Shown here: one piece after another, positions 11,247-63,810 of the stretch | Layout: the number at the start of each line of letters is the position of its first letter | Position numbering within the stretch: the first letter of the stretch is position 1 | Origin: Basidiobolus meristosporus CBS 931.73 | Taxonomy: Eukaryota; Fungi; Basidiobolomycota | Assembly: GCA_002104905.1 (NCBI GenBank) | Contig: MCFE01000154.1 | Coordinates: 62,001-126,000 of the forward strand | Length of the DNA stretch: 64,000 bases | Direction of reading: 5' to 3' | Position numbers and translations under genes: made by a program | Notes under the pieces: generated by a model | The model's input: the letters and a program-made list of their open reading frames with translations, nothing else | Databases searched by the model: none | What the model was told of the DNA's origin: nothing

Positions 11247-14200
11247 ATAAAGCAAGGAAAGCACTATTCTGAGCAACATAAGTAAGATTGAGTAAAATTA
11301 CCAGTAACTGTATCATACCACTGGCATCATGGTAGAAATTATAGTGCCAGATGGTGCCGTAGAGTGCCAGATCAATCCAGCACTATAAACTGGCTGGCAC
11401 TATGTGGCACTATCCAACGGAACAAGTCTACTAAGTCTTCCTGGATATTGCCTTGTTTGTGCACCAGTTGGTAAGTTGCAAATGGACATTCTCTGATGAT
11501 CTTGAATGGTCCTGTCCATTGTGGCTCAAACTTCTTCCAAGTGTTGTTTCTTAGCAATACATAGTTCCCAACTGTCAATGCTTCTGGTGCTATAGTCTTA
11601 TCAAATCTCTGCTTCATCTTTTCTGCACTTTGAGATACTTTGGTCTGTGCCTCTTGACGTCTTTGTTCCAGTTACTGGTGTCTACTTGGCTGACTGAGTT
11701 CATCTTCTAAGGTGTCTGTAAGTTTTGGTTAGGTGAGATCTCCTGGAATCCTTGGCTCACTTCCATAAACTAAGTAAAATGGTGATTGCTGGGTGGTGTT
11801 GTGTACTCTGACTCTGCATGCAAAGAGTGCTTGCTCTATATACTCATCCCATCTACTGACAACTCCATTTGCATACTTGGTCAGCATTTTTCCAAATAAT
11901 CCATTAAACCGCTCAGTGACTCCATTAGTTCTGGGGTGATATGCCAGGTTTTCAAGTGTCTGATCTGCTGCATTTCCAGGTAAGCCTCTAATGTCTTTGC
12001 CATAAAGTTTGCACCTCTATCTGATAAGATCTCCGCAGGGCATCCAAACTTCATCAGGATCTTGTGGTAAATGAAACTTGCAACTTGTTGTTCACTGGCT
12101 ATTGGTACAGCTTTAGCAACTGGCCATTTAGTGGCATGGTCAATAGCTACTAGGATCCAGCGGTTGCATTTCCTGGTAGTTGGCAGTCTTCCAATAAAGT
12201 TCAATTCCCCATCTCTCAAATGGTCTCACAGGCTCCAAAGGGAAGAGTTTGGCAATTCTTTGTGGCTGGCCTTGATTGATTTGGCAGTTTGGTCATGTTT
12301 TCACTAGCTTCTCAATATCTTGTTTCATTCTGGGCCACCATGCTCTGGCTTTCACAAGGCTATAGGTTCCTTCAATCCCAAGATGTCCATATCCATTGTG
12401 TAGCTTATGTATTAAATCCAGGCGAGAAACATAAGGGCAATAGGCAATAGGCTTCCATCAACAATTCGGTAGAGTGTTTCATCCTGTCCTACAAATTTGC
12501 TAGCTTCATCACAGATTATCTTCTTGATATCTTCATCCACCTCATTAGGAATGGCTTGGTCCTCCAAGTACTTTGGTAATAGGCTAGGCCAATCTGATTC
12601 ATGCACCAAGTTGAGTTGTGCAACTTGATCTAATCTTGATAAGGCATCAGCGACTGTGTTGTTTTTTCCAGGGCAGTAGACAATCTCCAAGTCAAATTGC
12701 TGATTGTATTCACTCCATCTTGTCATTCTTCTAGAGAGTACCTTCTGAGTAAATATATACTTGAGGGAGGCATGATCAGTCTTCACAGTGCATTTGACTC
12801 CTTCAATATAGCATCCCCATGTCTTCAAATAGTGCATTATAGCAAGCATCTCCTTCTCATGGACTGGATAGTTTTGTTCTGCTGAGTTCAGTTTCTTTGA
12901 TTCAAAGGCAACAGGGTAGTCCTTTCCCTCATGTTCTTGGCTCAGCACTCCACCAATTGCATAATCTCAAGCATCTGTGCACAGAGTGAACTCTTTTCTG
13001 AAGTCTGGTATTCTTAAGCTTGGCAGCTTAGCAAGTTCATTCTTGAGCGTCTGGAAGGCAGTCTCACAAGCTATGTCCCACTTGTAGGTATTGTCTTTCT
13101 TGAGGATATCAGTTAAAGGGGCTGCAATACTTGCAAAAGACTTGACAAATCTCCAATAATAGGAAACCATTCCAAGGAATGATTTGAGTTCTGATATGCT
13201 ATGGGGCTGCTTCAAATTCTTGATAACTTCAACCTTCTTAGGGTCTAAGGTCACTCCTGTGATAGTTACTACGTGTCCCAGGTATTCAACATGTTCCTTG
13301 AAGAATTCACACTTGGCTAGCTTGCCATATAGCTTATTCTCTCTTAGTTTCTTCATGACCTTTTCAATGTGCACCATGTGATCCTTTTCTGTCTTGCTCT
13401 ATATCAATATGTCATCCAGGTAGATTATCACAAACTTGTCTAAATACTCCTGAAAGACAGTCTGCATCAGCGTCATGAATATTGCAGGGGCATTAGTGAG
13501 GCAAAAACTCATGACTAAGTACCTGTAATGTCCATATCTGGTCCTGAATGCTGTCTTAGGGATATCTTCTGGTTTCACCCTAATCTGGTTGTATCCTGAC
13601 AAGAGGTCAATCTTGCTGAAAATAGTGGCTCCATTAAGTTGGTCAAAAGCTCATCAATCCAAGGTATGGGGTACTTATTCTTGACGGTAACTGAGTTCAG
13701 GGCTCTGTAGTCAATGCACATCCTAAGTGTTCCATCCTTCTTTTTCACAAAAAGCACTGGTGCTCCCCAGGGTGACTTGCTGGGCCTGATGTATCCTTCC
13801 TCCAATAGCTGATCAATTTGTCTCTTCATTTCATCCAATTCCAATGGACTCATTCTGTAAGGTGTCTTGCTCACTGGAGGGCTATCTCCTGTGTCAATGG
13901 CATGATCCATGTCTCTGACTGGTGGTAGGCTTACAAGCTCATCTGGAAACATGTCTGAATATTTCTTCAAGAGAGTCTAGACCTGCCAGGGTGCAGGGGT
14001 AGAGGAATCCTCCTGTAAAACCACCATGAGGAACATCTGAGTACCTTTTCTAAGCACTCTACAGAACTGGGTCTTGCTAAGTTCACTTGTCTCACACATA
14101 CTGGAATTGACCAAGTTAAAATCCAGCCTGGCAGGTAATAGCTCATAGGTCTTGTTGTCTTTTTGGATCTGAGTAGCATGGGTTCTCCAGTTGATTGATG

Positions 14201-15516
14201 GATTACAACAAAATAGCCAGGTTTTTCCAAGTACAAGGTCAAACTTGCAGTTCCCAAATATATAAGCCTGTAGGTCTTCTTCATAGTCATTGATCTTCAT
14301 TCTTACTGGCTGAGTAATACGGTTGATTATATGAGAGTTCCCATCAGCTGTTGAGACTGAAGTTGATTTGGTAGGTTCTGAGTTGATCCCAGCTTTCAAG
14401 GCAAATTGCTCCAACATGTACTCATGCAATGCTCCTGAGTCAATCATGATCTTGGCAGGTACTCCATTGATTACTCCATTCAAATTTAATAGCATTCCTG
14501 AGTTTGAGGTCATCTGGGATAGGTATTCTTCTGTCATGTGGAAGGTGAGTTCTGAGTCTTCTTCAAGCTCATCATTCATGTTACTATGCTCCATGGCCTC
14601 AATATGGTTAAAGGTTCTTGATGGCTGGTGTCCATTTCTTCTCTGAGGGCAGTACTTTGCAATATGTCCTTGCTGGTGGCAATTGAAGCAAAGCCCTTTC
14701 TTCTTACATTCTTCCAAGGCAGGATTCTTCTGCAAAGCATCTATTTCCATTGGTACTGCTTCTGACTGTCTTCTTTCATAATGATTGTAACCTTTCTGAT
14801 TAGACACTGCAGGCTTCCCAACTCCAAACATAGCTGAGTCATAGTCAATGGCAATCTTGATGGCTTCTTCAATAGTCTGAGGTCTTTGGTAATTCACTTC
14901 CTTGCAAGTTCTTTCTTTCAACCCATCAATAAAGTATTCAACTTGATCCAAGGGGTCCATTCTTTCAATTTGTCCAAGTAGACATCTGTACTCATAGATG
15001 TATTCTTGCACCATTCCTTTCTATCTGAGTATCTTTAACTTCCTTCTTAGTAGTGTCTGCTGGTGTGGAGGTTCAAAAGCATCCTGAATTTCCAACACAA
15101 ACTCATCCCAGGTAGAGATTGTAGAGCATCCCATCATAGTGGCCAACCTGATCTTGTTGTGGTACCACTGTAAAGCTGCATCTGCCAGGTAAGAAGCTGC
15201 ATAATGCAACTTGCTTTCTGGAGCAATTCCTTTAGCTTTAAAAGCTTCTTCAATCTGAAAGAGCCAAGTCCCCCGGTTTTCATTGACTCTGCCATGGTAC
15301 CGGTTGACCTCCACACTAAAGTTGCTCTTAACAGGGCATTGCTGGTTCTGAGCCATGGTAGTCATTCCTTGTTGTTGTTGGCTGAGGATCTGGAGTAACT
15401 GTTGCTGTTGGTCCAGGATTTGCTGCATGGTATTCTTCCATTCTTGATTGTCCAACATCTTGAGGGTGGTTTCTTCTTTCTTCAGGAGGGAGGTTTCTGA
15501 TTATTGCTGCTACCAA

Positions 15517-31685: not shown

Positions 31686-32570
31686 ATGACTTACTCATCT
31701 GAATGGTCTTTTCTCATCAATCCCATCACTACCACTGGATTTCCTTTTGACACACTGGAGGAGATCTATACCAAGTACTGTGGACCATCAACCCCAATCT
31801 ACTCAAGGAGATCCCTTGTTAAGCTTCTCTGCTATTACAAGAACTATTGCCCTACAAGGTTTCATCCCACCATCCATGGCAACAAAAGTCCTAGAAGCTT
31901 TCATTCCCAGCTGACAGCAATGGAGAACCACCTTGCAGAGGGTATGAATGACTTAGAGCAAGCTTGGAATACTAGGTTCAGAAGCTCCAATAGACTTCCA
32001 TATCCCAGAGTGTTCAGCAATAGGTTCCATATCAGGAGTATTTTGGATACCTTCCCAGTGAGGATTAACAGACCTTCTAGAGGGCAGAGGCACTTTTATT
32101 CTGGCAAGTACAAGGCACACTGTGTGAAGTTTCAAGCACTGTCTGACATTGAGGGCAACATCATCTGGTTTAGTGGGCCATTTGCTGGAAGTAGGCATGA
32201 CAAAGCACTCTGGGTAGAGAATCATCCTGAATTCAGTAGAGGGGAGAAATGTATGGCAGACTTAGCCTATATAGGAGAGGATTGTCAGAGATTAGGATGT
32301 ATTACAGCTTATAGGAAGCCAAGAAATGGTGTGCTTAGCAGGAAGCAGAAGCTCTACAATGAGATATTTAATCATTTCAGAGTGAGGGTAGAGCACACAT
32401 TTGGATATCTGAAGAGATTCAGCATATTGGCAGGTAAATACAGAGGAAAGTCATATATAGGTGAAAACAGCAGGATAGGTAAAATAGTTAAGATACTTAT
32501 TAATGCACAGTATGTTCATACAAGAAGACATCCACTGAGAGAAATGTGTCTGGAGCATTATGAAGAGTAA
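31686..32570 (+). CDS. DDE_Tnp_4 (IS5/PIF-Harbinger-like) transposase, 294 aa
   Basis: ILDTFPVRI (D1), FYSGKYKAHCVKFQ, GPFAGSRHD, MADLAYIG (D2) and RVRVEHTFGYLKRFSIL (E). Confidence 0.93.
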   Translation: MTYSSEWSFLINPITTTGFPFDTLEEIYTKYCGPSTPIYSRRSLVKLLCYYKNYCPTRFHPTIHGNKSPRSFHSQLTAMENHLAEGMNDLEQAWNTRFRSSNRLPYPRVFSNRFHIRSILDTFPVRINRPSRGQRHFYSGKYKAHCVKFQALSDIEGNIIWFSGPFAGSRHDKALWVENHPEFSRGEKCMADLAYIGEDCQRLGCITAYRKPRNGVLSRKQKLYNEIFNHFRVRVEHTFGYLKRFSILAGKYRGKSYIGENSRIGKIVKILINAQYVHTRRHPLREMCLEHYEE

Positions 32571-39193: not shown

Positions 39194-42100
39194 TCACTTC
39201 CTTCCGGAAGAGGAGTTTTTTGATACCTTCTGGGTTCCTCTGCGGCTCCAATACTGATCAATAATGGCAACATCATCAAAGTTGGTGTAAGGTTCCCAGG
39301 TGTTGTGTTTGGCATCATAGCCTTTCCACTTGACTAAATAAAGGCAATTTGGTTCTTCTCCATCATGGTCCACAATAGCTTCAACTTCATAGGATTCCAA
39401 AGTTACTGGGTCTTGAGAAATAACTTTGAGTGAAGAAGGTGGAAAGTTTTTGGGTAGCAGTGCTCCAGTGTTATCCTGAAGTACATAAGATCCTCCAGTA
39501 GTGCGTCTGACAACCTTGAATGGTCCTTCATACTTGGGGTCAAGCTTAGATTGCCGGATTGGATCTAGTGTCATGACATATGACCCATCTGGGAAGCTGC
39601 TGTTCCTGTGTCTTGAGGCATATGTTGAAGTCATCTTTTGCTGAGAGGCCTTACTTCTGGCACTGATAGCAGGGTAGACAATGTTGGTAAGGTACTCAAG
39701 CCGGTTCTTTAGCTTATCTGTATTCAAACTTGCTAACTCTGTATTCTGGTAGTCTCCAAAGTGGTTGTATCTTCTTCCAAACATCAAGGAAAATGGGGTT
39801 GATCCATGTAGAGCGGCAATTTTGGTGTTGATAGCATACTGTACAGTTGGAATGTACTTGTCCCAATTCTTCTTGATACCTTTGATAGATTTCCTGAAGA
39901 TGTTCACTGAGGTCTGAACATGTCTTTCAGCCAGTCCATTAGCTTTGGGATGATATGGAGTGATCAGACGATGATCAATGGCACTATTCTGACAAAGGGC
40001 TTTGATCACGTGATTCACAAATTCTGTTCCATTATCCAATTGAATGACCTTAGGGAATCCAAAAAGGCAGAAGAGCTTGAATAGTTCTTGTGCAATAGTG
40101 GCCGCATACTTGTCTGGGATGGCTTTGAGGAAGACAAAACGTGTGCAGACATCCACAATTACAAAGAGGTAGTGATTACCATCATCACTAGTGGTGAAAG
40201 GTCCAGATAGATCAATTGCAATATGATCCATAGGAAGGCTTGCATGGATGGGGCTCAAAGGGTGAAATCCATGGCGGCTGATATTGTAAAGTTGACATTC
40301 TCTGCACAACTTGACAAATTCTATGCAGTCAACTTTGATATTTGGCCAGTGATATCCATCAGAGTGCAGCTTCTTCATAAGTGTGTCAGCTCCAAAGTGG
40401 TCAAGTAAATGACTCCTCTGTATCAATGTTTTCCTTTGTTCTTCAGGTGGGATTTTCCAAGTTGCTGAATCCAGTTGAGGAATTATTTTGGAAGTTGTAG
40501 AGAGTTTACTGATTACATCAGTAATCACATGTCCCTCCCAAGGTGAAGTTGGAAAAAGTCTTGACAGGTGGTCAGGAAGGATGTTGAGAATTCCTGGGCG
40601 ATGAATAACTGTATATTCATAATCAAGTAGAGTATCAAGCCAGTTGGTAAGCATTGGAGTCAGAGTCTTCTGAGTGTGGATATAGACAAGGGCTTAGTGG
40701 TCAGTGTACAAGGTAAAAGGATTACCCCATAGATACTGATGAAACTTCTTCAAGGCAAAGACTATGGCAAGTAGCTCCTTCTTGGTAGCAGAGTAGTTTC
40801 TCTCAGCAGGTTGTAGGGACCTGGCTTGGAAAGAGATCCAGTGAGGCGGATTTTGGTCTTCATCTTGATAGAGGACTGCCCCTAACCCAACATTAGATGC
40901 ATCTGTAGCAACAACAAAGGGCTTAGTAAAGTCTGGGTAGGATAAGGTGGGTGCTTGTGGAAGCAGTTGGCAGAGTGACTCAAAGGCTTGGTCATGAGTC
41001 TTGTTCCAGGCTGAGGCAAGATCAGGGCTATGGCGTAATGCATCTAATGGGGCACTCAATGAGGACATGAGTGGTATGTGTTCCCTGAAATAGTTGAATA
41101 CTCCAAGATAATGTTGAAGTTGCTTGGCGCTAGTGGGTTTTGGCCATTCTGGGATATTGACCAGTTTGAAAGGATCTAATTGGTGGCCAGCTGGTGTGAC
41201 TATAAATCCAAGTAGATGGATTTTGAGGCGGGCAAAACTGCACTTTTCAGCATTGAGAATCAGTCCAGCAGTTGTCAGTCTGTTGATTACATCAGTGACA
41301 TGGGTTGCATGATCATCATGGTTAGTGGAGAATATGATGACATCATCAACAAATACCAATGCGTATGGTGCATTCTTGAGTATTATAGTCATGACTCTCT
41401 GAAACTTGCTGGTAAGTGTCTTTAGGCCAAAGGGAGCTCCCTGAAACATCCATTGCATATTATTCCAAGTAAAGGCAGTCTTATGCTGATGATCAGGATG
41501 GATCTGGAATTGGTGATATGCATCCTTCAAGTCCAACTTGGAGAATACTTTTGCTCCTGATAGTGCGGAAAAGATATCTTGGATTCTTGGAATTGGAAAC
41601 TTGTCATCTTGGAGAAGCTTGTTCAGAGGTCTGGGGTCTAAACAAGGTCTCTTCAGGGTTAGATTTCCATCAGCGTCTTTCTTTGGTGCAAGCATCAAAG
41701 GGCTGTTGAATGTTGTGTTGACAGGGGCTTGAGTGATAATTCCATTGTCAGCCCATTTTTGGACTATCTCATCAACTAAGTGTTGACATGAATGCGGAAT
41801 TGGGTGTTGCCTCCTCCATGTTGACTCACCAGGTGGGGTCTCTAGTGTAACAATGGATTCTGGGATGGTGCAGAAGCTGTTCCTTGGAATGGCCTGATTT
41901 CTCTCTATAGCCGGCTGAATATCTAATTTGACTGATTGAGAATATTCTTGAAAAGTTGGGGTTAACTCTTCTTCTTCCGCTTGGGATGAGATAATCTCTG
42001 GGATTTGATCCATTATGAGCGACTGAGATTTAGTGATTCCTGGATAGGAAACCGGTAGTCCGCCTATGTGAAAGCCAAGTTTGGTGAAGGTGTCCAGACC

Positions 42101-43678
42101 AATGACTACCTGAGGTCCATCTGGTATGTCAATCACTTCCATCTGATGGATTATGGTTACTGAGCCACAATGTATGTTGATTGGGTTGGTAATGCCAATT
42201 CTTGGGGCTGAGAGATCCTTAGCTGCAAGAATGATTTTTCCTGGTCGTTTTTCTATCTCCAAATTGAGTTCTCTGACTACATTGGGTGATACAATAGAGT
42301 TGGATGATCCAGTATCCAGTAGTGCTACGTATGATTGGCCATTGAGGGTGAGTGGCACTTCTATGGCTTTGAGCTGTGTGATTGGTTGCTTCTTTTCTTG
42401 GACAGTTGCAATTTTAGCCGGAAACTCAAAGAGGTTGTGATAATCTTGAACTGTAAGTTCTTCATATGCTTCTTCATACCCCATTTTATCATTGGCTGAA
42501 TGATCATCAAGGATCTGGGTAATTTTGGCTGATGGTGTGGAGTTCTTCTCAGGACAGGCAGGTGATCTATGTCCCCTATTTCCACATTTAAAGCACTTGT
42601 CATCAGCATATGGATTATCAGTTTTGGTGTTTTGCTGCTTTTCTGCGGTGTTTCCTGACTTGTTTGACTGCTTGGTGATGCCTTTGTATTCACTGGTAGA
42701 ATGATAGCATTTTCCATGAAGCTCACAGTGCTTAGTAGCGGTTGACTGCTTCTTGGTCACATGACTGGTCTCTTTTCCGGCTGTTGTGGGATATTGGGCT
42801 GAGCTGCCTGAAGTCTGGCTAACAGCTGCAGTCAAGGTGATTGCCAGTGTACATATCTCTGAGATCTGGTCATAGGTACGTGCAGGGTTGCATACTTTGA
42901 CAATATCAATATTGCTCTGTAGCTGGTGTGAAAAGTTTGAAAGAAAATGAGCAGTAAGCGATGGATTATCATCACTAACTCCAGCTAATCTCATTTGTCT
43001 TTGGAATCTATCTCAGAAGTGTTGCACAGATTCACCTTTTTGCATTTTAGTTTTCCATAAGTCGCAGTTCAGATGTGCTTTCTTGAGAGGATCTTCAAAA
43101 TGGCTGCAAAAGAGGTTTTGGGCAATTTTCCACGTACTATTGGAAGGAATGTTCACTTCAACCCAGTCCGCATCTTGCATTGTGAGACAGAGAGGCAGAA
43201 GTCTAGCCCAGTTGGTGTCAGGGTCTAGCTGGTGTGCAGCTAAGACGTGACTAAACTTGTAAAGAAACTCAGTTGGATTCTTGATGGCATTGGTGCCTTC
43301 AGCATAAACAGGCAAGGATCTTGGGACAACCACCGGGGCAGGTCTAGAAGGAGATGTAGATCTGGAGGATTCAAAGGCATGACTTCTTGGTGGCTGATGC
43401 AGAGCAAGGCTTGGTGGATTTTCAATGCTGTCAATTACTATGGCAATATTCTCCAGTGCTTCCTTAATTATTCCAATTTCATCTTGGTAACCGGATATAA
43501 CTTCAAGGAGTTCATCTCTACGGTGATTATCAGATCTTGTTTTGGCAAGCTTTGAGTGCTCAATCATCATGGTATTTCTTTCAAGCATGATGTTTTCAAG
43601 CTGTTCAGTAAGTTCTTCCTGATTTCTTCTGGCTTCTTCCAACATGGAAAGGTTTGGATTGCTTGCTGCTGAGGACAT
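39194..43678 (-). pseudogene. Single-frame gag-pol polyprotein (about 1490 aa) with two premature stops (43013-43015 TGA, 40694-40696 TAA)
   Basis: One frame throughout: gag, CFKCGNRGHRSPAC, LLDTGS protease, FVDD RT, TDASNVG RNase H, DNGTEF integrase, GPF motif and chromodomain YEVEAIVDH..YLVKWKGY..NTWEP. Confidence 0.95.
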
Positions 43679-50500: not shown

Positions 50501-51942
50501 AAAGGACAGAGCACCCAAGGTGTATTGTTAGAAGTTCATTGCTGCACAGCATGAGAGGGCAAGCAACCGTCAAGCCTTAGCCCCCAAATATATCATGGAA
50601 CAGGACGTATTCAACGAACTGGGTGCTACCCATACCTAGGCTCCTTGAAAACAGGTCAGCTATTGCTCTGAGCAAAAAAGAAGGTTGCAGGGAACCGGGT
50701 GGAACTCAGCTATCCCAAGTGGCGATCAGGGAAGGCCTTGTGGAGTGGCGCCCGGTTGACTTGGGATCCCATGGATGTCCAGACCCCTCCTTACTCTTCA
50801 CGGGCTCAGAGCACTTGACGAACGAGCCAGAAGCGTATTCATTCCCCACCACCGCCAATGCCAAACACCGGCACATCACGTGACCCTGTACACATGCTAA
50901 GGCTCGAGAATTCTAGATTCATGCTGGTTTCCGTACACGTATCCCGCAGATCTCCCAGGACATGCAATTCCTCCATTGTATGGAGTGCTGTCCTCCAGCT
51001 GCGTAACCCTGTACGGCGGGCCAAGCTACCAGTAATTCGAGAGTAAACGGAGCGGACCTCATCTATTCGGCAAGAGAGGTGGAAGGTGAGAAAACCATGA
51101 ATCGGACCGGGGAGGGGGTGAAGGCGGAGGAGGGGTGGGCGGGATCACGGTCGAGAAAGGCCAATGCTGTCTGGGCTATCCCGGTGAAGAAGGAATCGAA
51201 ATCCTCCAAGGCAAATATGGGAGGGGGTTTGAAAGGGTGGTTGGGTGAGACGTCATGGATTCCTTTTATACCACCGCCCCGCCCCCACGGAGGTTGGTGT
51301 GGTGCTTAGTGCGCGCCTCACTGATCTAGCAAGCAAACCTTATTGCTCCGCGCCAAACCGGTACTGAGATGGATTGCACCGACCGGACACTGGCCAAGCG
51401 TCAGCGCTTGACAAGCTGCCAATGGCCACCCACGACCTGGCCACCATGGGCCGATGGGTTGGCCACCACCCGCAGCTCCATTCTATCCCTGAGCACCATC
51501 GACGGGATCGAGGTAGGTGACTCGTTGAATGAGGCGGCCCTACCAGATTTGTGATACATGTGCCCATTGAGCGTAGTCAAATCAGCCATCCGTTTCAAAC
51601 AAGCAATTTCCCACGTACATCCAGCATCACAACAATTTTTCCTCCGTTTGCAAGGCCTGATTGATTTTTCATCTTATCCTGTTACCAACCAAAGGGAGAA
51701 CCAACCCGGCCTGACCAAACCATTCAACCACTTGGAAATCCCCCCGTTCACCGAGAACATCCAGCCATCGCCTCTGTCAACACGCAAGAGTGAAGGCGAG
51801 TATACACAACAGTACTTGGGGATTCCCTCCACCTACCCCTGAAAACAAGCACGAAGCATCGAAGTAACCGACGTGAGTGGAAGTTGCGACGTTTAGAAAC
51901 TTCCTTCGAGTGCCAATTACGCTAGAAACCGATATAGACAAC

Positions 51943-54900
51943 ATGGCCATGAATGCCGCATCAGCATACTCCCAGTTCAACCAGCATTCCCTCCACAGAT
52001 CAAGCTCCCTTTCGCCCTCCCCCACACCCCTGGACAACCATGTCTCCAACGCCGGACGACCGCGTAACGAGCTGTGGGATCATTTCATCAAAGGAGAAAA
52101 GAGGCCCACCACCAACAAATACGACGCGCGATGTCGGTACTGCGTTGAGAAAGGGGAGATTGGCACTATCCGGCCGGTGCGGGGGGAGAAAAAATTCATG
52201 GTCGCCCACCTGAAGAAGTGTATCAACGCACCGGAGGCGCTGCGCACGCGCTTTCGAGGGGATTCCCTTCGGGTGTCCGAGACGAGCCAGAAGAACGAAG
52301 ACGAACTGGAAACCAAACAGGAGGCCGACGACCCGCTAACGAAGAAGCGTAAATTGGCCCCGGTTTCCGAGCCGGAGTGGCATCCCTCTAGCAGTACCTC
52401 CTCCCCCAACGGATTCCTCCCCAGCACCCCGGATGCCGGCAAAAAGCCAAAGGAGGACAAGTTTCAGTTGGACGAGGCGTTTGTTTCCAAATACCAGGAT
52501 CGACTGCCTTCCTTTGGCTTCAACGGGCTGGGAGAAATCATCTATCGACGAACCTACAGCAGACTTGCCAAAGACGGGACTCGTGAGCAATGGTGAGCTG
52601 AGAGCATTTTGCGAATCCCTCGGGCGGAGAGCTGACGTTTCTTTTCTATCCAGGTGGCAGACGGTCCGCAGAGTGGTCAATGGCACGTTCAGCATGCAGA
52701 AGCGATGGGTCGAGCAGTCGAACCTGGGCTGGGACCAAGAAAAAGTACTCGTTTTCTTCCCATTCTGCTTCCCTCAACCTCACTAACGGAGAAATTTGCA
52801 TTCAGGCGCAACGGTCGGCACAAAAGATGTACGATCGCATCTTCAGCATGAAGTTTCTTCCCCCTGGTAGAGGTAACGCCCTTCACCCAAGCCACATCCA
52901 GGCAATCTACTAACGTGCGTTCTGTTTGGGGTGGCTCTAGGTCTCTGGGCGATGGGCTCGCCGCTGACAGAGGAACGGGGCATCTACACCGCCCTTAACA
53001 ACTGCGGCTTCGTGAGCACGGAGTGTATGTGGGCACGAGGGTTTACCCCCAGTAAGCCGTTTGCATTTTTGATGGACGCCTCGATGTTGGGGTAAGTGCG
53101 GAGCCGGACCTTGCCTCATCCTGCACTCAACTAAGCGAGTTTTCCTAGGGTCGGCGTCGGATTCGACACGAAAGGCGCAACAATCGCCCGCGAGCGGGGG
53201 ATCCTCGTGACGGGGCCCAACCCTGCGCTCTCGCCCAACGTTTATGTGATCCCGGATTGCCGCGAAGGATGGGTCAAGTCGATTGAGCTGATGATTGACT
53301 GCTACTTCGACGCTAGCATGAGCATACAGGCAAGTCTGTCGTGCTTGAACGTCGCAGATCGATTGGCTTACATGCTGTTCACAGGAATTCAAGTATCATT
53401 GCATCCGCCCCGAAGGCGCTCCAATTAAAGGGTTTGGGGGACAATCATGTGGGCCCCAGCCTCTGATTGATCTTCACTGCCGCATCCGAGAGGTACTCAA
53501 CAACAACATTGGGGCCCCGATAACAGTCACGACCATCGTGGACATCATGAATCTGATCGGCAAGTGTGTCGCAAGCGGAAATGTAGGAAGCCCAAGCCTC
53601 TGCGGTCGTCCAAGTCTCTTAACCGTTTGTGCATGTGTAGGTCAGACGCAGCGCGGAGATCGCCTTTGGAGACCCCTTTGATGACGAGTACATTGACCTG
53701 AAGAATTACGAGGTGAACCCTCATCGATGCGAATACGGGTGGACCAGCAACAACTCGGTACGTGTTTATTTGCCTTTCGCCCGGCGCCACGACGCTAACC
53801 AAGCGCTGCCGCTTCTCTAGGTGTTTGCCAACATTGGCATGGACTATCACAACATCTGCAAACGAGTGGTCACCAACGGAGAGCCAGGGTTTTCATGGCT
53901 GACCAATGCGCAGAACTACGGCCGAATGGGAGATCCAATGGTAATCCCTACTAAACCCGCCGTCTCCCTGCACTACCAAGACACTCACCTCTCCTCTCGA
54001 TGCGTTAGGACAAACGAGACTACCGAGCTCAAGGCGGAAACCCGTGCCTCGAGCAGACACTTGAGTCCTTCGAGCTGTGCTGTCTGGTGGAAGTGTTTCC
54101 CAACAATCACACCACAATCAATGACTTCTTGGAAACGCTGGAGTCTGCATTCTTGTACGCGAAGACCGTGACCCTGGGAACCACGCACTGGCCAGAAAGC
54201 AACAGGGTGATGATGAGAAATCGGAGAATCGGCACCGGGCTGAGCGGAATTGCCCAGTTCATAAGCAAACGAGGTACAGCTACAGCGCACATCCCCCGAC
54301 GTGACTTTTATCTGACTAGCGACATTCTTTTAGGAATTGAGGAGCTGAGGGTGTGGTGTGACGAGGGATACAACCATATTCTAGATATCGACAAACGGTA
54401 AGTGTTGGCTCCGAGTGACTGGCAGCAGCGTGCTTTTGGTAACGCAGTTGGCGCTAGGTTGTGTGAGTGGCTATGCATCCCCCGATCTATCAAGATAACG
54501 ACCGTGAAGCCCAGCGGCACGGTTTCGCTTTTAGCCGGAGGTAGGTGTTGCGATGTTGGCTTCTCTGGTCGAGAGATTAACACGACTGGTTGTTGTCTAG
54601 CCACCCCTGGACTACACTATCCGGAAAGTAGGTTTTGCATTCGCCGCGTGCGCTTATCGAGAATATCGGAGATGGTCGAACCCTTTCGAGAGGCCGGTTA
54701 TAAAGTGGAGCCGGATGTTGGTAGGAACCGGATACGTGTATTTGATAGAAAGGCGGGGTTTTTTGACTAACACGATGGTTGCGTTACAGTCGATCCAAAC
54801 ACCTTGGTGGTCGAGATCCCGATCGACCATGGGGAAGGTATCAGATCACTGGTGGATGTGTCTATGTGGGAGCAGTTGTCGCTGGCAGCTTTCATGCAGA

Positions 54901-55322
54901 GATACTGGTCAGATAACCAGGTGTCGTGCACCATCACATTCGATCCAGAGACCGAAGGGGATCACCTCAGGTTCGCCCTCAATTATTTCCAGTATCAGTT
55001 GAAGGGGGTGTCGTTCTTGCCGCGGATACCTATAGGCGCGTACTCTCAAATGCCATACGAGGCCATCTCAGAGCTCAAGTATCTTCAACTGACCGCGCGT
55101 ATCACGAAGCCAGGCCCCAAAAGCCCGAGCATATCACATTTGCTGCTGAACCCACAGGGGCTGACCGCGCCAGACCTTCGAAACGTCGAAGGGGACCCCA
55201 CGGTCGACCCTGAGATCGAGAAGTTTTGTGACTGGGGACCTTACATGTTTGACAGCGCCTGCTCCAACCTCGGTCTACCAGAGGAGGCAAGCACATACCC
55301 CTCGAACATAATGAGATTCTAG
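51943..55322 (+). CDS. nrdJ: Class II (adenosylcobalamin-dependent, monomeric RTPR/NrdJ-type) ribonucleotide reductase with an N-terminal BED-type zinc finger, about 879 aa, 13 exons
   Basis: Exons 51943-52592, 52654-52744, 52806-52872, 52941-53091, 53149-53329, 53385-53582, 53641-53757, 53821-53940, 54009-54273, 54334-54397, 54458-54540, 54601-54720 and 54790-55322 sum to 2640 nt in frame. Motifs: YRRTYSR, FLPPGRGLW, ALNNCGF, LGVGVGFD, IPDCREGW, GNVRRSAEIAFG, NGEPG, GGNPCLEQ, ELCCLVE, NRRIG, TTVKPSGTVS, WSDNQVSCT and QMPYE. The start codon is the first in-frame ATG and is not verified. Confidence 0.92.
52060..52233 (+). other. BED-type zinc finger coding segment inside RNR exon 1
   Basis: PRNELWDHF..KYDARCRYC..RGEKKFMVAHLKKC fits the W-x2-F / CxxC / HL-x2-C pattern of hAT-type BED fingers. 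Confidence 0.8.
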
Positions 55323-56288
55323 TAGCAACTGGCCACTGCTCGCATCCACTCAGGAAGGTGGCAAGTGGGAGGCCCCGACCTCCATTCCATGCGACAGAGC
55401 GCAAGATCAATGACCAGCACGGATGCTTGCCCATTCTCATGCCATCTACTGTAGAATCCTCTCATACCACCCCCCTCCCTCCCTCCCTCTGACCACCTAT
55501 CCTGTACATTCCTGGTTTTGTTAGCATCTTCGATAGCTACGCGTTGTATTGATTAGACCCCATGTCCCTTCCCGCATCGTCCATCACCCAGCTTGACAAT
55601 CATCTATCTCTACGAACATTCATATCACATAGTCTTCGGTTCTCCATCATTCTTTGCCCAGCGCAATGTCACCTGACCCCCTGCCAGCCCACCCACCATC
55701 TAAACAAAAATAACAGCCTGCATATATTTTCCCAGCCAAGAGATTATTGGTGGCTCTGATTTGTGGTTTCGAGGGCCATCGGCAGTGGTTGGTATGGCCC
55801 TATGTGCACTCGGCATGCCATAAGGCAGGAGCATTGTCGAATTGCAGGAGAGGATGCTGTATGGCAGCGAGGTGCGCTTCCAAGCATAAGGGCAGGGAGT
55901 TCTCTACGCCGCTGCCGGGAAGGGGCATTCGGACGGACAATGTGAATCAAGTTGAGCGGACCAGGCTCCACCAGGTCGAGAGGAGGCGTCCCAGAGCGCA
56001 TGAACGAGTCGGTCGCTTGCTGTGGCTCTGGCGGGGTTCTGGCACCAAAGCTCTGCACCATGGAATGGAGTCACCCGGTTAGGGGCATCCGAAGCATGAA
56101 CCGTCGCAAACTTACGATGGAGCATGTTTCCCGGGAGAATTGGTTCTTAAATGATCTCTGGCGTGGAGACCAAAAATTCCCTACCTTTCGTAATCTTATC
56201 TGTCGCAAGCATTGTTTCAACCCTTCTTAACTCCCTTCCACTGCGTGGACCTCCCCCTTATCTCGTTGGACCACCGTCGCTAACAACC

Positions 56289-59001: not shown

Positions 59002-60719
59002 GCCAGCATATTGCGATGTTTCCGGATTATCCAGTCAACTCGTCTGCATTATCAGTGATGATTTCCCTTTTCCTGCCTTTTGAACCCATCTATCCGTGAG
59101 TCGCGGGCTCTGCATCTTGTTTCCTTCAATAAACCATGAAATTTGCTACCCAAGACCTAACTTGGTTTCTCCGCCGGGCCCATTTCGGGTTCCAGAAAGC
59201 AGGGATTCGTTGCGCAGCAAACAGCTGTCATGGCTTTGGCAGATGCTGATCGCTGGCCCCAACCCCCAAAGCGAATGAATTGATCCCACTCGGTGGAGGA
59301 GCAAAGTACATGCCGGGGAATCATGACCTCAACAGGTGCGATGCTTGCTCACCTTTTGGTTTCGATACGGATTGTCAGATCCAATACGAGCGCGTTAACA
59401 GGCGGACAAATAATGTTGGATGACGTCATACTTCCTAAGTAGGCTTGATGAGTTACTTGAGGAATGACCTGGGTTGGGACATGATAGTTCTTACTTGGGC
59501 TGGGGCCTACGAAACTGGTAATCACATATAGAAAGGCTGATTTGGTAAGGTGAACTTTGGGAGGATGCCCGGGTATTCCAGAATATAGCGAACCGATTAC
59601 GGTCGCGTGCAGGGTTGGGTTTCGTTGGCCGGGAGATCCCACACATTCTCCCTGATAACTGCACCAGATTTACCCTGAATGGTAGCCTGGCCAGTCCTAT
59701 GGCGACCAGTACGGACCACTTTTTCTGTGCAACACACGAGTGATAGAGTAACATTAATTAACCGTTGCATTCGTGGAAACCCAACAGGTTCGGAGCAGGC
59801 CCGCAGATGTGTACCTTTTCATACTGGCTTAGCTAGATGCAGGAGAAACCAGAGTGAGACAGAATGGCTGGGCATCGGACAAGTCAAGCGGGATAAGGCT
59901 TAAGAGTGTCCAGGAATAGGCTCTTCTATGTGGCACTATTTGCTAGCCTGATGAGCTGAACAAGTCCTGGCTGTAGGCAACACTTCCGTGGCAAGTCCCA
60001 GGCTTCACCGTTAAGAGATCGTTCAAGCAGCGCGCCAAGTAATGATTGCGAATGGGGTTTGGCCCAATCCTCGGACAACCGACTTATCTTACTCATCGGC
60101 TAGGGCGGTTGCTTCCAACCTTTAGGTTCTGAAAGTCATCAGTCTGCGGAGCGTGTCGAGTGACCATTGGAAGATCCGATCCACATACGATTCAACACAA
60201 ATCGATGATTTCTGGAAATCCTCCGCTAAGATGATCTTCCATCCCGCTTGGCCGTTCCAGCAGTCATAGAAGGTTTGAGGATTAAGCGATCTTCATTGGG
60301 ACCCTGGAACGGAATGTGGGCCAATGAACGGGCGCCATGCTCCCACAACCCTTCTGGCTTGGACTTCAGCTAAACACATTAAAAATAGGCTTCTATCGGA
60401 TCTGGAAGATGGAATGTGGAATTCACAATAGGGAATATAGAATTCGAATAGTTGGCTTTATTTGTCATCCCAGGTCACCTGATCCGGCGGATTTGACTAC
60501 TCCAATGTGCCTGCGGTTTTATATTCTGTGATGGTATTGGTTTTGTTGCTTTAGATGAAACTTGGATCTCCCATTTGTCCTTTATTCATACCTACTACCT
60601 CCGAAGACCACCGCAAGTGCAATTTCCTTCCCGAAAGTCCAACCCCTATACACAACCCAAGCCCCGATAACTATCTACTCTACCCAGAACCCTTTACTGT
60701 TGCCAACACGCCTGCCAAC

Positions 60720-63810
<3,091 letters not shown>

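What the first reader, a model, noticed from the sequence alone, without database searches (positions are those of the whole stretch)
51943..52592. BED zinc finger plus NLS-like motif fused in frame to a B12-dependent class II ribonucleotide reductase
Seen: exon 1 is one uninterrupted frame containing a Ser/Pro leader, a BED-like finger (WDHF..ARCRYC..MVAHLKKC, 52060-52233), an acidic linker, TKKRKL (about 52342-52353) and then the RNR N-terminus (DKFQLDEAF..GEIIYRRTYSR). No Met lies between the finger and the RNR core, and I see no properly spaced branch-site/acceptor pair ahead of the RNR domain, so the enzyme seems unable to start without the finger. Established: BED fingers are DNA-binding modules of hAT transposases, and monomeric class II RNRs normally begin near the F-x-L..YxRTYSR segment. 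Inference: this may be a transposase-derived domain recruited onto RNR, giving a nuclear, DNA- or chromatin-tethered dNTP source or a self-regulating enzyme. I know of no description of this architecture but could not search.
Basis: partly seen in the sequence, partly recalled or inferred. Interest (0 to 1): 0.88.

Follow-up and report, generated by a model that had tools for sequence, protein, structure and literature searches.

The report
BED zinc finger fused to B12 RNR
A fungal gene for a vitamin-B12-dependent enzyme that makes DNA building blocks really does carry a DNA-binding-type zinc finger and a nuclear-import-like signal at its front end. A spliced public transcript contains the whole fusion, and I found this architecture in no database or paper I could search.

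Summary
Exon 1 (51943-52592) is one open frame. It holds a Ser/Pro-rich leader, a CCHC finger with the BED signature, a disordered acidic/Ser-Pro linker with KKRK, and the N-terminus of a monomeric class II ribonucleotide reductase.

A 13-exon, 879-aa model follows. A spliced 3312-nt contig in a public run of the same study matches it exactly. That contig starts at 51687, runs unbroken through exon 1 and lacks all 12 introns. ATG 51943 is its first AUG.

The finger falls below Pfam's zf-BED cut-off. Its relatives (one named BED-type by UniRef), its predicted fold and a language-model search all point to BED. The catalytic Asn-Pro-Cys-x-Glu motif and the redox cysteines are intact, but the C-terminal cysteine pair is C-x10-C rather than C-x4-C.

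No protein among 1.84 billion representatives matched both parts. None of about 150 fetched homologues or 80 metagenome loci has a finger. Other eukaryotic copies carry presequence-like leaders instead.

Best reading, inferred only: a nuclear, possibly DNA-tethered paralogue that makes dNTPs.

Unchecked scan notes on other DNA of this genome report a second BED-RNR copy and BED fusions to cytidine deaminase and NIF3.

Verdict: new variant of a known kind.

The parts
51687..51942 (+). 5' UTR, at least this long
   Evidence: The spliced contig in run X3 begins at 51687 and is identical to the window. It has no ATG and contains in-frame stops.
51943..52592 (+). Exon 1: start codon, leader, finger, linker and RNR N-terminus in one frame
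   Evidence: Open frame. Continuous in the cDNA contig from 51687 to 52591 with 0 differences. Start context is A at -3 and G at +4.
52066..52230 (+). BED-type CCHC zinc finger (aa 42-96; W45, F48, C64, C67, H89, C93)
   Evidence: Pfam zf-BED E 0.002-0.016, below cut-off. Family alignment A1 has W, F, G, A, C, C, H, C invariant. The AF2 model's best structural matches are ZBED1/2/3/6 and Dpy-20. Atlas features score 0.93 to zf-BED clusters.
52231..52464 (+). Linker aa 97-174, likely disordered, with KKRK (52342-52353) and KKPK (52441-52452)
   Evidence: 72% disorder-promoting residues, and K-K/R-x-K/R motifs. The NLS function is inferred.
52465..52592 (+). RNR_Alpha N-terminal segment (FGFNGLGE, YRRTYSR)
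   Evidence: Pfam PF17975, 36.7 bits against cut-off 26.4. Aligns with the first residues of bacterial homologues.
52654..55322 (+). Exons 2-13 of the class II RNR: 52654-52744, 52806-52872, 52941-53091, 53149-53329, 53385-53582, 53641-53757, 53821-53940, 54009-54273, 54334-54397, 54458-54540, 54601-54720, 54790-55322 including the stop
   Evidence: Model. The listed joints and the piece arithmetic of the cDNA contig agree with every exon. RNR-II_ins_dom hits. 1L1L alignment of the catalytic motif. 54-59% identity to homologues.
53330..53384 (+). Intron 5, with a GC-AG boundary
   Evidence: It is removed in the cDNA contig: joint 53325 to 53381, with 5 ambiguous letters.
55218..55262 (+). C-terminal tail with an atypical cysteine pair (C-x10-C)
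   Evidence: Alignment with 13 homologues, all of which are C-x4-C. The transcript is continuous here, so no hidden intron restores the usual spacing.
55323..55738 (+). 3' UTR (approximate end)
   Evidence: The cDNA contig extends 338 nt beyond 55400. No AATAAA motif was seen.

Best explanation
This is an expressed gene for a chimeric protein. From N to C it has a 41-aa Ser/Pro-rich leader, one BED-type CCHC zinc finger, a disordered linker of about 78 aa carrying a classical-type basic cluster (KKRK), and a complete monomeric adenosylcobalamin-dependent ribonucleoside-triphosphate reductase of the Lactobacillus leichmannii type.

Shown: the fusion lies in one exon, it is present in a fully spliced transcript whose first AUG is the fusion start, the finger keeps every residue that is invariant in its family, and the catalytic residues are intact.

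Inferred: in a genome with several class II RNR paralogues, this copy has a nuclear-import and nucleic-acid-binding leader where other eukaryotic class II RNRs have an organelle-type presequence. The protein would enter the nucleus through KKRK and be held on DNA or chromatin by the finger. There it would reduce NTPs directly to dNTPs, giving a local supply for replication or repair.
For: Gene model and open frame. Run X3 holds a 3312-nt contig identical to the window. It spans 51687-52591 unbroken and lacks all 12 introns. There is no upstream ATG, and the extension has coding-like GC3 and codon use. BED identity. The finger is 47% identical (E 1e-11) to that of Pythium protein P0058, which UniRef names 'BED-type domain-containing protein'. 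The finger has net charge +6, and the linker is 72% disorder-promoting with KKRK. The catalytic NPC-x-E motif and the Cys equivalents of C119 and C419 are conserved. Of 24 other eukaryotic class II RNR N-termini, 18 have at least 4 basic residues in the first 30 aa and 14 have no acidic residue there; this copy has only 1 basic residue. Paralogous RNR contigs occur in the same runs, and Basidiobolus meristosporus is tabulated with 5 class II RNRs. The closest fingers also sit N-terminally on an enzyme.
Against: There is no localisation, DNA-binding or activity data. zf-BED scores below Pfam's cut-off, and every structural match is individually weak (Foldseek E about 0.3-1; VIA Z 3.2). Run X3 has no recorded library type, so its RNA origin is inferred from the spliced contig. 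Minor isoforms cannot be excluded from an assembled contig. The C-terminal cysteine pair is C-x10-C rather than C-x4-C, which may impair turnover with thioredoxin. A paralogue's contig has about 60 times higher depth in X3, so this copy may be a minor one. Conservation of the finger in the roughly 88%-identical relative (runs X4/X5) could not be read out codon by codon.
Confidence: 0.55

Rival explanations
1. Nuclear targeting only. The leader, finger and KKRK act as an import or retention signal or a protein-interaction module, with no DNA tethering. The enzyme simply works in the nucleoplasm.
For: The KKRK motif lies in a disordered linker. BED fingers of non-transposase proteins also mediate protein contacts; the mouse ZBED3 structure matched (9l4j) is a component of a protein complex.
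Against: An NLS alone would suffice for import. The finger keeps all eight family-invariant residues and a +6 charge, which suggests that it binds a ligand of its own.
Confidence: 0.2
2. A nearly neutral, recently captured finger on a redundant paralogue. A BED-coding fragment became the 5' end of one of several RNR copies and has no adaptive role, and the copy may be decaying.
For: The gene borders a 50-kb transposon island. The architecture was found nowhere else. The C-terminal cysteine spacing is atypical. Contig depth is low relative to a paralogue.
Against: Codon usage and GC3 match the rest of the gene. All finger ligands and all catalytic residues are intact. All 12 displayed indels in the roughly 88%-identical relative fall in introns or the UTR (24 further indels were not shown). 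No transposase body lies nearby. An unchecked scan note reports a second copy with the same architecture.
Confidence: 0.12
3. A regulator rather than a supplier. The RNR body senses nucleotides or B12 and the finger binds promoters, analogous in logic to bacterial NrdR. This could be an enzyme-transcription factor or a pseudo-enzyme.
For: A DNA-binding-type finger is joined to an allosterically regulated nucleotide-binding enzyme. The altered C-terminal redox tail could reduce catalysis.
Against: The active-site Cys, Asn and Glu and the redox pair are fully conserved, which argues for catalysis. Nothing points to specific target sites.
Confidence: 0.1
4. An artefact. The fusion would come from a mis-assembled genome or transcript, or from an untranslated upstream ORF.
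For: Run X3's library type is not recorded.
Against: The finger and the RNR N-terminus share one exon in a 58.9-kb genomic contig. An independent spliced contig is identical to it. A relative's contig spans the same region. ATG 51943 is the first AUG and has a good context.
Confidence: 0.03

Closest known systems
Monomeric class II RNR (NrdJ/RTPR) of Lactobacillus leichmannii (PDB 1L1L) and eukaryotic NrdJ of Dictyostelium, Euglena, oomycetes and non-Dikarya fungi
   Same: It has the RNR_Alpha N-domain, the B12 RNR insertion domain, the NPC-x-E thiyl-radical motif and the redox cysteine pair. It is 54-59% identical to eukaryotic and bacterial members. Fungal class II RNRs are already described (PMC8085122).
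   Different: It has an N-terminal extension of about 170 aa with a zinc finger and a basic cluster. The homologues examined start 2-25 aa before the core or carry presequence-like leaders. Its C-terminal cysteines are spaced C-x10-C.
BED zinc fingers (Pfam PF02892): hAT transposases, ZBED1-6, Dpy-20, DREF/BEAF, SLEEPER
   Same: It has W-x2-F, C-x2-C, a spacer, then H-x3-C. The predicted strand-strand-helix core best matches the BED domains of ZBED1/2/3/6 and Dpy-20.
   Different: It scores below Pfam's cut-off. It is attached to a metabolic enzyme rather than to a transposase or hAT dimerisation domain or a transcription-factor body. No DNA binding has been shown.
BED-alpha/beta-hydrolase proteins P0127 (Logan run) and P0019/L002 (marine metagenome)
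   Same: They are among the closest relatives of this finger (35-44% identity by alignment or tblastn). They share TNK[FY]-x-A-x-C and RGEK-x2-M-x2-HL-x2-C-x2-AP, and the finger is also N-terminal to an enzyme.
   Different: The enzyme partner and the organisms differ. These proteins are themselves uncharacterised.
Accessory N-terminal domains of RNRs (the ATP-cone) and the zinc-ribbon/ATP-cone repressor NrdR
   Same: It is an N-terminal add-on to an RNR catalytic subunit, and it links a zinc finger to dNTP metabolism (established knowledge, not tested here).
   Different: There is no ATP-cone here. NrdR is a separate bacterial repressor without a reductase domain. The resemblance is one of logic only.

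Membership tests
Class II monomeric ribonucleotide reductase (RTPR/NrdJ) | RNR_Alpha N-terminal domain | tested here: met
   PF17975, 36.7 bits against cut-off 26.4, on aa 176-216; the hit is cut at the exon end.
Class II monomeric ribonucleotide reductase (RTPR/NrdJ) | B12-dependent RNR insertion domain | tested here: met
   PF21995 scores 29.4 bits (cut-off 27) on exon 6 and 24.6 bits on exon 5, scanned as separate exon pieces.
Class II monomeric ribonucleotide reductase (RTPR/NrdJ) | Catalytic Asn-Pro-Cys-x-Glu motif and redox cysteines (1L1L C119, C408, C419) | tested here: met
   Alignment to 1L1L residues 402-481. NNC, NPCLEQ and ELCC are conserved in the 14-sequence alignment.
Class II monomeric ribonucleotide reductase (RTPR/NrdJ) | C-terminal shuttle cysteine pair, C-x4-C | tested here: inconclusive
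   Two cysteines are present but spaced C-x10-C, whereas all 13 homologues are C-x4-C. The functional consequence is unknown.
Class II monomeric ribonucleotide reductase (RTPR/NrdJ) | Adenosylcobalamin-dependent NTP reduction | not testable with these tools
   This needs an enzyme assay.
BED zinc finger (PF02892 / PROSITE PS50808) | C-x2-C ... H-x3-5-[HC] ligands preceded by conserved aromatic residues | tested here: met
   W45, F48, C64, C67, H89 and C93 are present and are invariant across 12 related fingers.
BED zinc finger (PF02892 / PROSITE PS50808) | Score at or above the curated family threshold | tested here: not met
   Pfam gives 15.7-18.3 bits against cut-off 20.6. Six of 12 family members hit zf-BED, with best E 4e-4. 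PROSITE could not be run. Homologue P0058 carries UniRef's BED-type name.
BED zinc finger (PF02892 / PROSITE PS50808) | BED fold | tested here: inconclusive
   The AF2 model has pLDDT 75.8. ZBED1, ZBED3 and ZBED2 are among the top 9 PDB hits. Eleven of the top 14 Swiss-Prot models are BED proteins, aligned on their BED regions. VIA's top two are ZBED1 (Z 3.2) and ZBED2 (Z 2.4). The ranking is consistent, but no single score is significant.
BED zinc finger (PF02892 / PROSITE PS50808) | Zinc-dependent DNA binding | not testable with these tools
   This needs EMSA, DAP-seq and metal analysis.
hAT transposase or domesticated hAT | RNase-H-like catalytic core and hAT C-terminal dimerisation domain | tested here: not met
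   tblastn of eight BED-bearing relatives against the window matches only the finger. The rest of the protein is RNR.

The most novel reading that the evidence does not exclude
The gene is one member of a lineage-specific system. In it, a common BED-finger and NLS leader places several nucleotide-metabolism enzymes on nuclear DNA: two class II RNR copies, cytidine deaminases and NIF3, according to unchecked scan notes. Together they would form a chromatin-tethered dNTP-synthesis module, a natural 'replitase'-like arrangement. The BED-hydrolase proteins of other eukaryotes would then be further examples of BED fingers used as enzyme-targeting leaders.
Probability: 0.15. Interest if true: 0.85.

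Novelty: new variant of a known kind. Interest (0 to 1): 0.62.

Why it matters
Where dNTPs are made relative to the DNA that uses them is an old, unsettled question (local supply and channelling at replication or repair sites). The role of class II RNRs in eukaryotes that also have class I has been called enigmatic (PMC3605638). A natural protein that joins a DNA-binding-type finger and a nuclear signal to a single-chain NTP-to-dNTP reductase offers a direct handle on both questions. Localisation, DNA binding and activity with and without the leader are all simple to test.

It also points to an undescribed use of BED fingers as N-terminal leaders on metabolic enzymes. Finally, it adds an accessory domain other than the ATP-cone to the RNR family.

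Tried and rejected
1. No RNA runs were listed for the locus. The 'any' search gave runs of unrecorded type, and one of them proved to hold the spliced contig.

2. I could not retrieve the window's own full-length protein, because a spliced model has no reference. Exact look-ups of the exon-1 ORF and of a neighbouring ORF were not on record. A two-row alignment used as a long query returned only the tardigrade protein, and this blank is uninformative. The 175-aa extension alone found nothing among proteins of 96-306 aa.

3. An alignment of the separate exons to a Balamuthia RNR was too scrambled to use.

4. The single-sequence AF2 model of exon 1 was uninformative, at pLDDT 46.

5. The PDB sequence search with exon 1 gave only noise.

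6. The metagenome scan matched only the RNR motif. None of the 80 loci has a finger upstream. L010, whose match reaches the linker, is cut by its contig end and shows no finger in the visible part.

7. I considered a local hAT insertion as the source of the finger. No transposase remnant lies in the window.

8. I rejected an internal acceptor at about 52467 or a downstream start, because the cDNA contig is unbroken across exon 1.

9. The organism name (Basidiobolus) comes from other agents' notes. It fits the five class II RNRs tabulated for B. meristosporus, but I could not verify it independently.

Full report
**Observation**

The stretch 51943-52592 is a single open frame on the + strand. 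It starts at ATG 51943, with A at -3 and G at +4. The order of its parts is as follows:

- a 41-aa Ser/Pro-rich leader;
- a finger with W45-x2-F48, C64-x2-C67 and H89-x3-C93 (52075-52221);
- a 78-aa linker that is 72% disorder-promoting residues and carries KKRK (52342-52353) and KKPK;
- from D172, the conserved start of a monomeric class II ribonucleotide reductase (FGFNGLGE, YRRTYSR).

Pfam places RNR_Alpha on aa 176-216 (36.7 bits, cut-off 26.4). It places zf-BED on aa 43-91 at E 0.002-0.016, which is 15.7-18.3 bits against a cut-off of 20.6. No Met lies between the finger and the RNR core. The extension looks like coding sequence of this gene. Its GC3 is 0.72, against 0.67 in the RNR part and 0.52 in the introns. 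Its codon counts correlate with the RNR part at r = 0.54, against 0.02 and 0.11 for the shifted frames.

**Gene model and transcript**

No RNA run was listed. Among runs holding the DNA, X3 comes from the same study as the probable source runs X1/X2. It is small, and its library type is unrecorded. It holds a 3312-nt contig that is identical to the window. The contig starts at 51687, runs unbroken to the end of exon 1, and lacks every one of the 12 introns. The listed joints and the arithmetic of the laid pieces fit each exon of my model, including the GC-AG intron. I read this contig as cDNA.

The 256-nt 5' UTR contains no ATG and has in-frame stops. Scanning ribosomes would therefore start at 51943 and make the fusion. 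Minor isoforms cannot be excluded from an assembled contig.

**Is the finger a BED finger?**

Each line of evidence is modest, but all agree.

- An exhaustive HMMER search of 1.84 billion representatives found relatives of aa 16-130 only. These are long oomycete proteins (Pythium, Thraustotheca), a tardigrade protein with a weak DUF659 match, and two proteins in which the finger precedes an alpha/beta hydrolase.
- The Pythium oligandrum protein P0058 is named 'BED-type domain-containing protein' by UniRef. Its finger is 47% identical to this one, at E 1e-11.
- An alignment of 12 fingers has W, F, G, A, C, C, H and C invariant. Six of the 12 hit zf-BED.
- The profile's best PDB sequence match is the ZBED2 finger, at E 0.09.
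- The AF2 model (pLDDT 75.8) has a strand-strand-helix core.
- The model's matches are ZBED1, ZBED3 and ZBED2 among the top nine PDB chains. Eleven BED proteins are among the top 14 Swiss-Prot models, aligned on their BED regions. ZBED1 and ZBED2 are the top two by VIA-align, at Z 3.2 and 2.4.
- A language-model search puts the segment among zf-BED clusters, at score 0.93.

I therefore call it a BED-type finger, with the caveat that Pfam's threshold is not met. No transposase body lies in the window.

**The enzyme**

The core is 54-59% identical to eukaryotic and bacterial monomeric class II RNRs. The thiyl-radical motif aligns with residues 402-481 of L. leichmannii RTPR (1L1L). The Asn-Pro-Cys-x-Glu motif and the redox cysteines are conserved, so the protein looks catalytically competent.

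One oddity remains. The C-terminal cysteine pair, which in this family shuttles reducing equivalents, is C-x10-C here and C-x4-C in all 13 homologues compared. The transcript shows no hidden intron that would restore the usual spacing.

**Is the architecture found elsewhere?**

- No representative protein matched both halves of exon 1.
- None of about 150 class II RNRs fetched has a BED-like motif.
- None of 80 metagenome loci, nor the Mucoromycota-type locus L001, has one upstream of the RNR start.
- The paper that surveyed fungal class II RNRs mentions no zinc finger or fusion. No paper in the library pairs zf-BED with ribonucleotide reductase.

Other eukaryotic copies instead begin with leaders that look like organelle presequences. 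Of 24 examined, 18 have at least 4 basic residues in the first 30 aa, and 14 have no acidic residue there. This gene has one basic residue in that stretch.

**Genomic setting**

The reads show further class II RNR contigs in the same runs. One has about 60 times the depth of this gene in X3, although contig depth is only a rough measure.

Notes of this scan call the genome a Basidiobolus. I did not verify this. It fits Table S1 of PMC8085122, which lists five class II RNRs for B. meristosporus CBS 931.73.

A relative (runs X4/X5) has one contig spanning 51600-55365 with 418 substitutions and 45 gap positions. All 12 indels that were displayed lie in introns or the UTR, which is consistent with a conserved frame. 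Another 24 indels and most substitutions were not shown.

Unchecked first-stage notes on other DNA of the same genome report a second BED+NLS RNR, an RNR with a mitochondrial-type presequence, and BED fingers on cytidine deaminase and NIF3.

**Interpretation**

What is shown is a real, transcribed, in-frame fusion of a BED-type finger and a basic cluster to an apparently active class II RNR paralogue.

What is inferred is the mechanism. This paralogue would be sent to the nucleus and perhaps held on DNA or chromatin, where a single polypeptide could turn NTPs into dNTPs at the site of use.

The rivals are import without tethering, a nearly neutral captured finger on a redundant and possibly decaying copy, a regulator or sensor role, and an artefact. 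The artefact reading is essentially excluded.

The finding is a new variant of a known enzyme family, not a new kind of system. Its value is that the hypothesis is simple to test.

**Limits**

I could not obtain the public protein record for this gene, the sequence of the second copy, or the relative's sequence. As a result, neither selection on the finger nor prior automatic annotation could be checked.

Noticed in passing
window 1-50000: This is an AT-rich (about 40% GC) transposon island that ends about 2 kb upstream of the gene, where GC jumps to about 53%. It includes a Ty3/Gypsy pol and integrase with a chromodomain (39194-43678, minus strand), a PIF/Harbinger-type DDE_Tnp_4 ORF (31686-32570) and a retroviral-type protease ORF (13977-15014).
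   Followed up: partly
window 53330-53384: Intron 5 has a GC-AG boundary, and the spliced contig confirms that it is removed.
   Followed up: yes
window 55218-55262: The C-terminal redox cysteines are spaced C-x10-C, instead of the C-x4-C seen in all 13 homologues compared. There is also an 8-aa insertion just upstream.
   Followed up: partly
window 52939-54950 (conserved RNR segments): At least three other contigs in the genomic run, 15-20% divergent, match only conserved RNR pieces, so they are paralogous class II RNR genes. One has depth 3390 in run X3, against 55 for this gene.
   Followed up: partly
L002:585-2110 and protein P0127: A marine metagenome contig and a Logan contig encode the closest finger relatives directly upstream of, or fused to, an alpha/beta hydrolase. 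This is a second, independent case of a BED-type finger leading an enzyme.
   Followed up: partly
proteins P0001-P0145 (exon-1 fragments) and L001:6001-6390: Many eukaryotic class II RNR first exons begin with Arg/Ser-rich, acid-free leaders that look like mitochondrial presequences. This suggests that organelle targeting is common for eukaryotic class II RNRs.
   Followed up: partly
window 60555-63810: A multi-exon gene on the + strand has ORF pieces that, by eye, show a Ser/Thr kinase motif (HRDIKPQN) and an IRE1-type C-terminal region. No tool was run on it.
   Followed up: no
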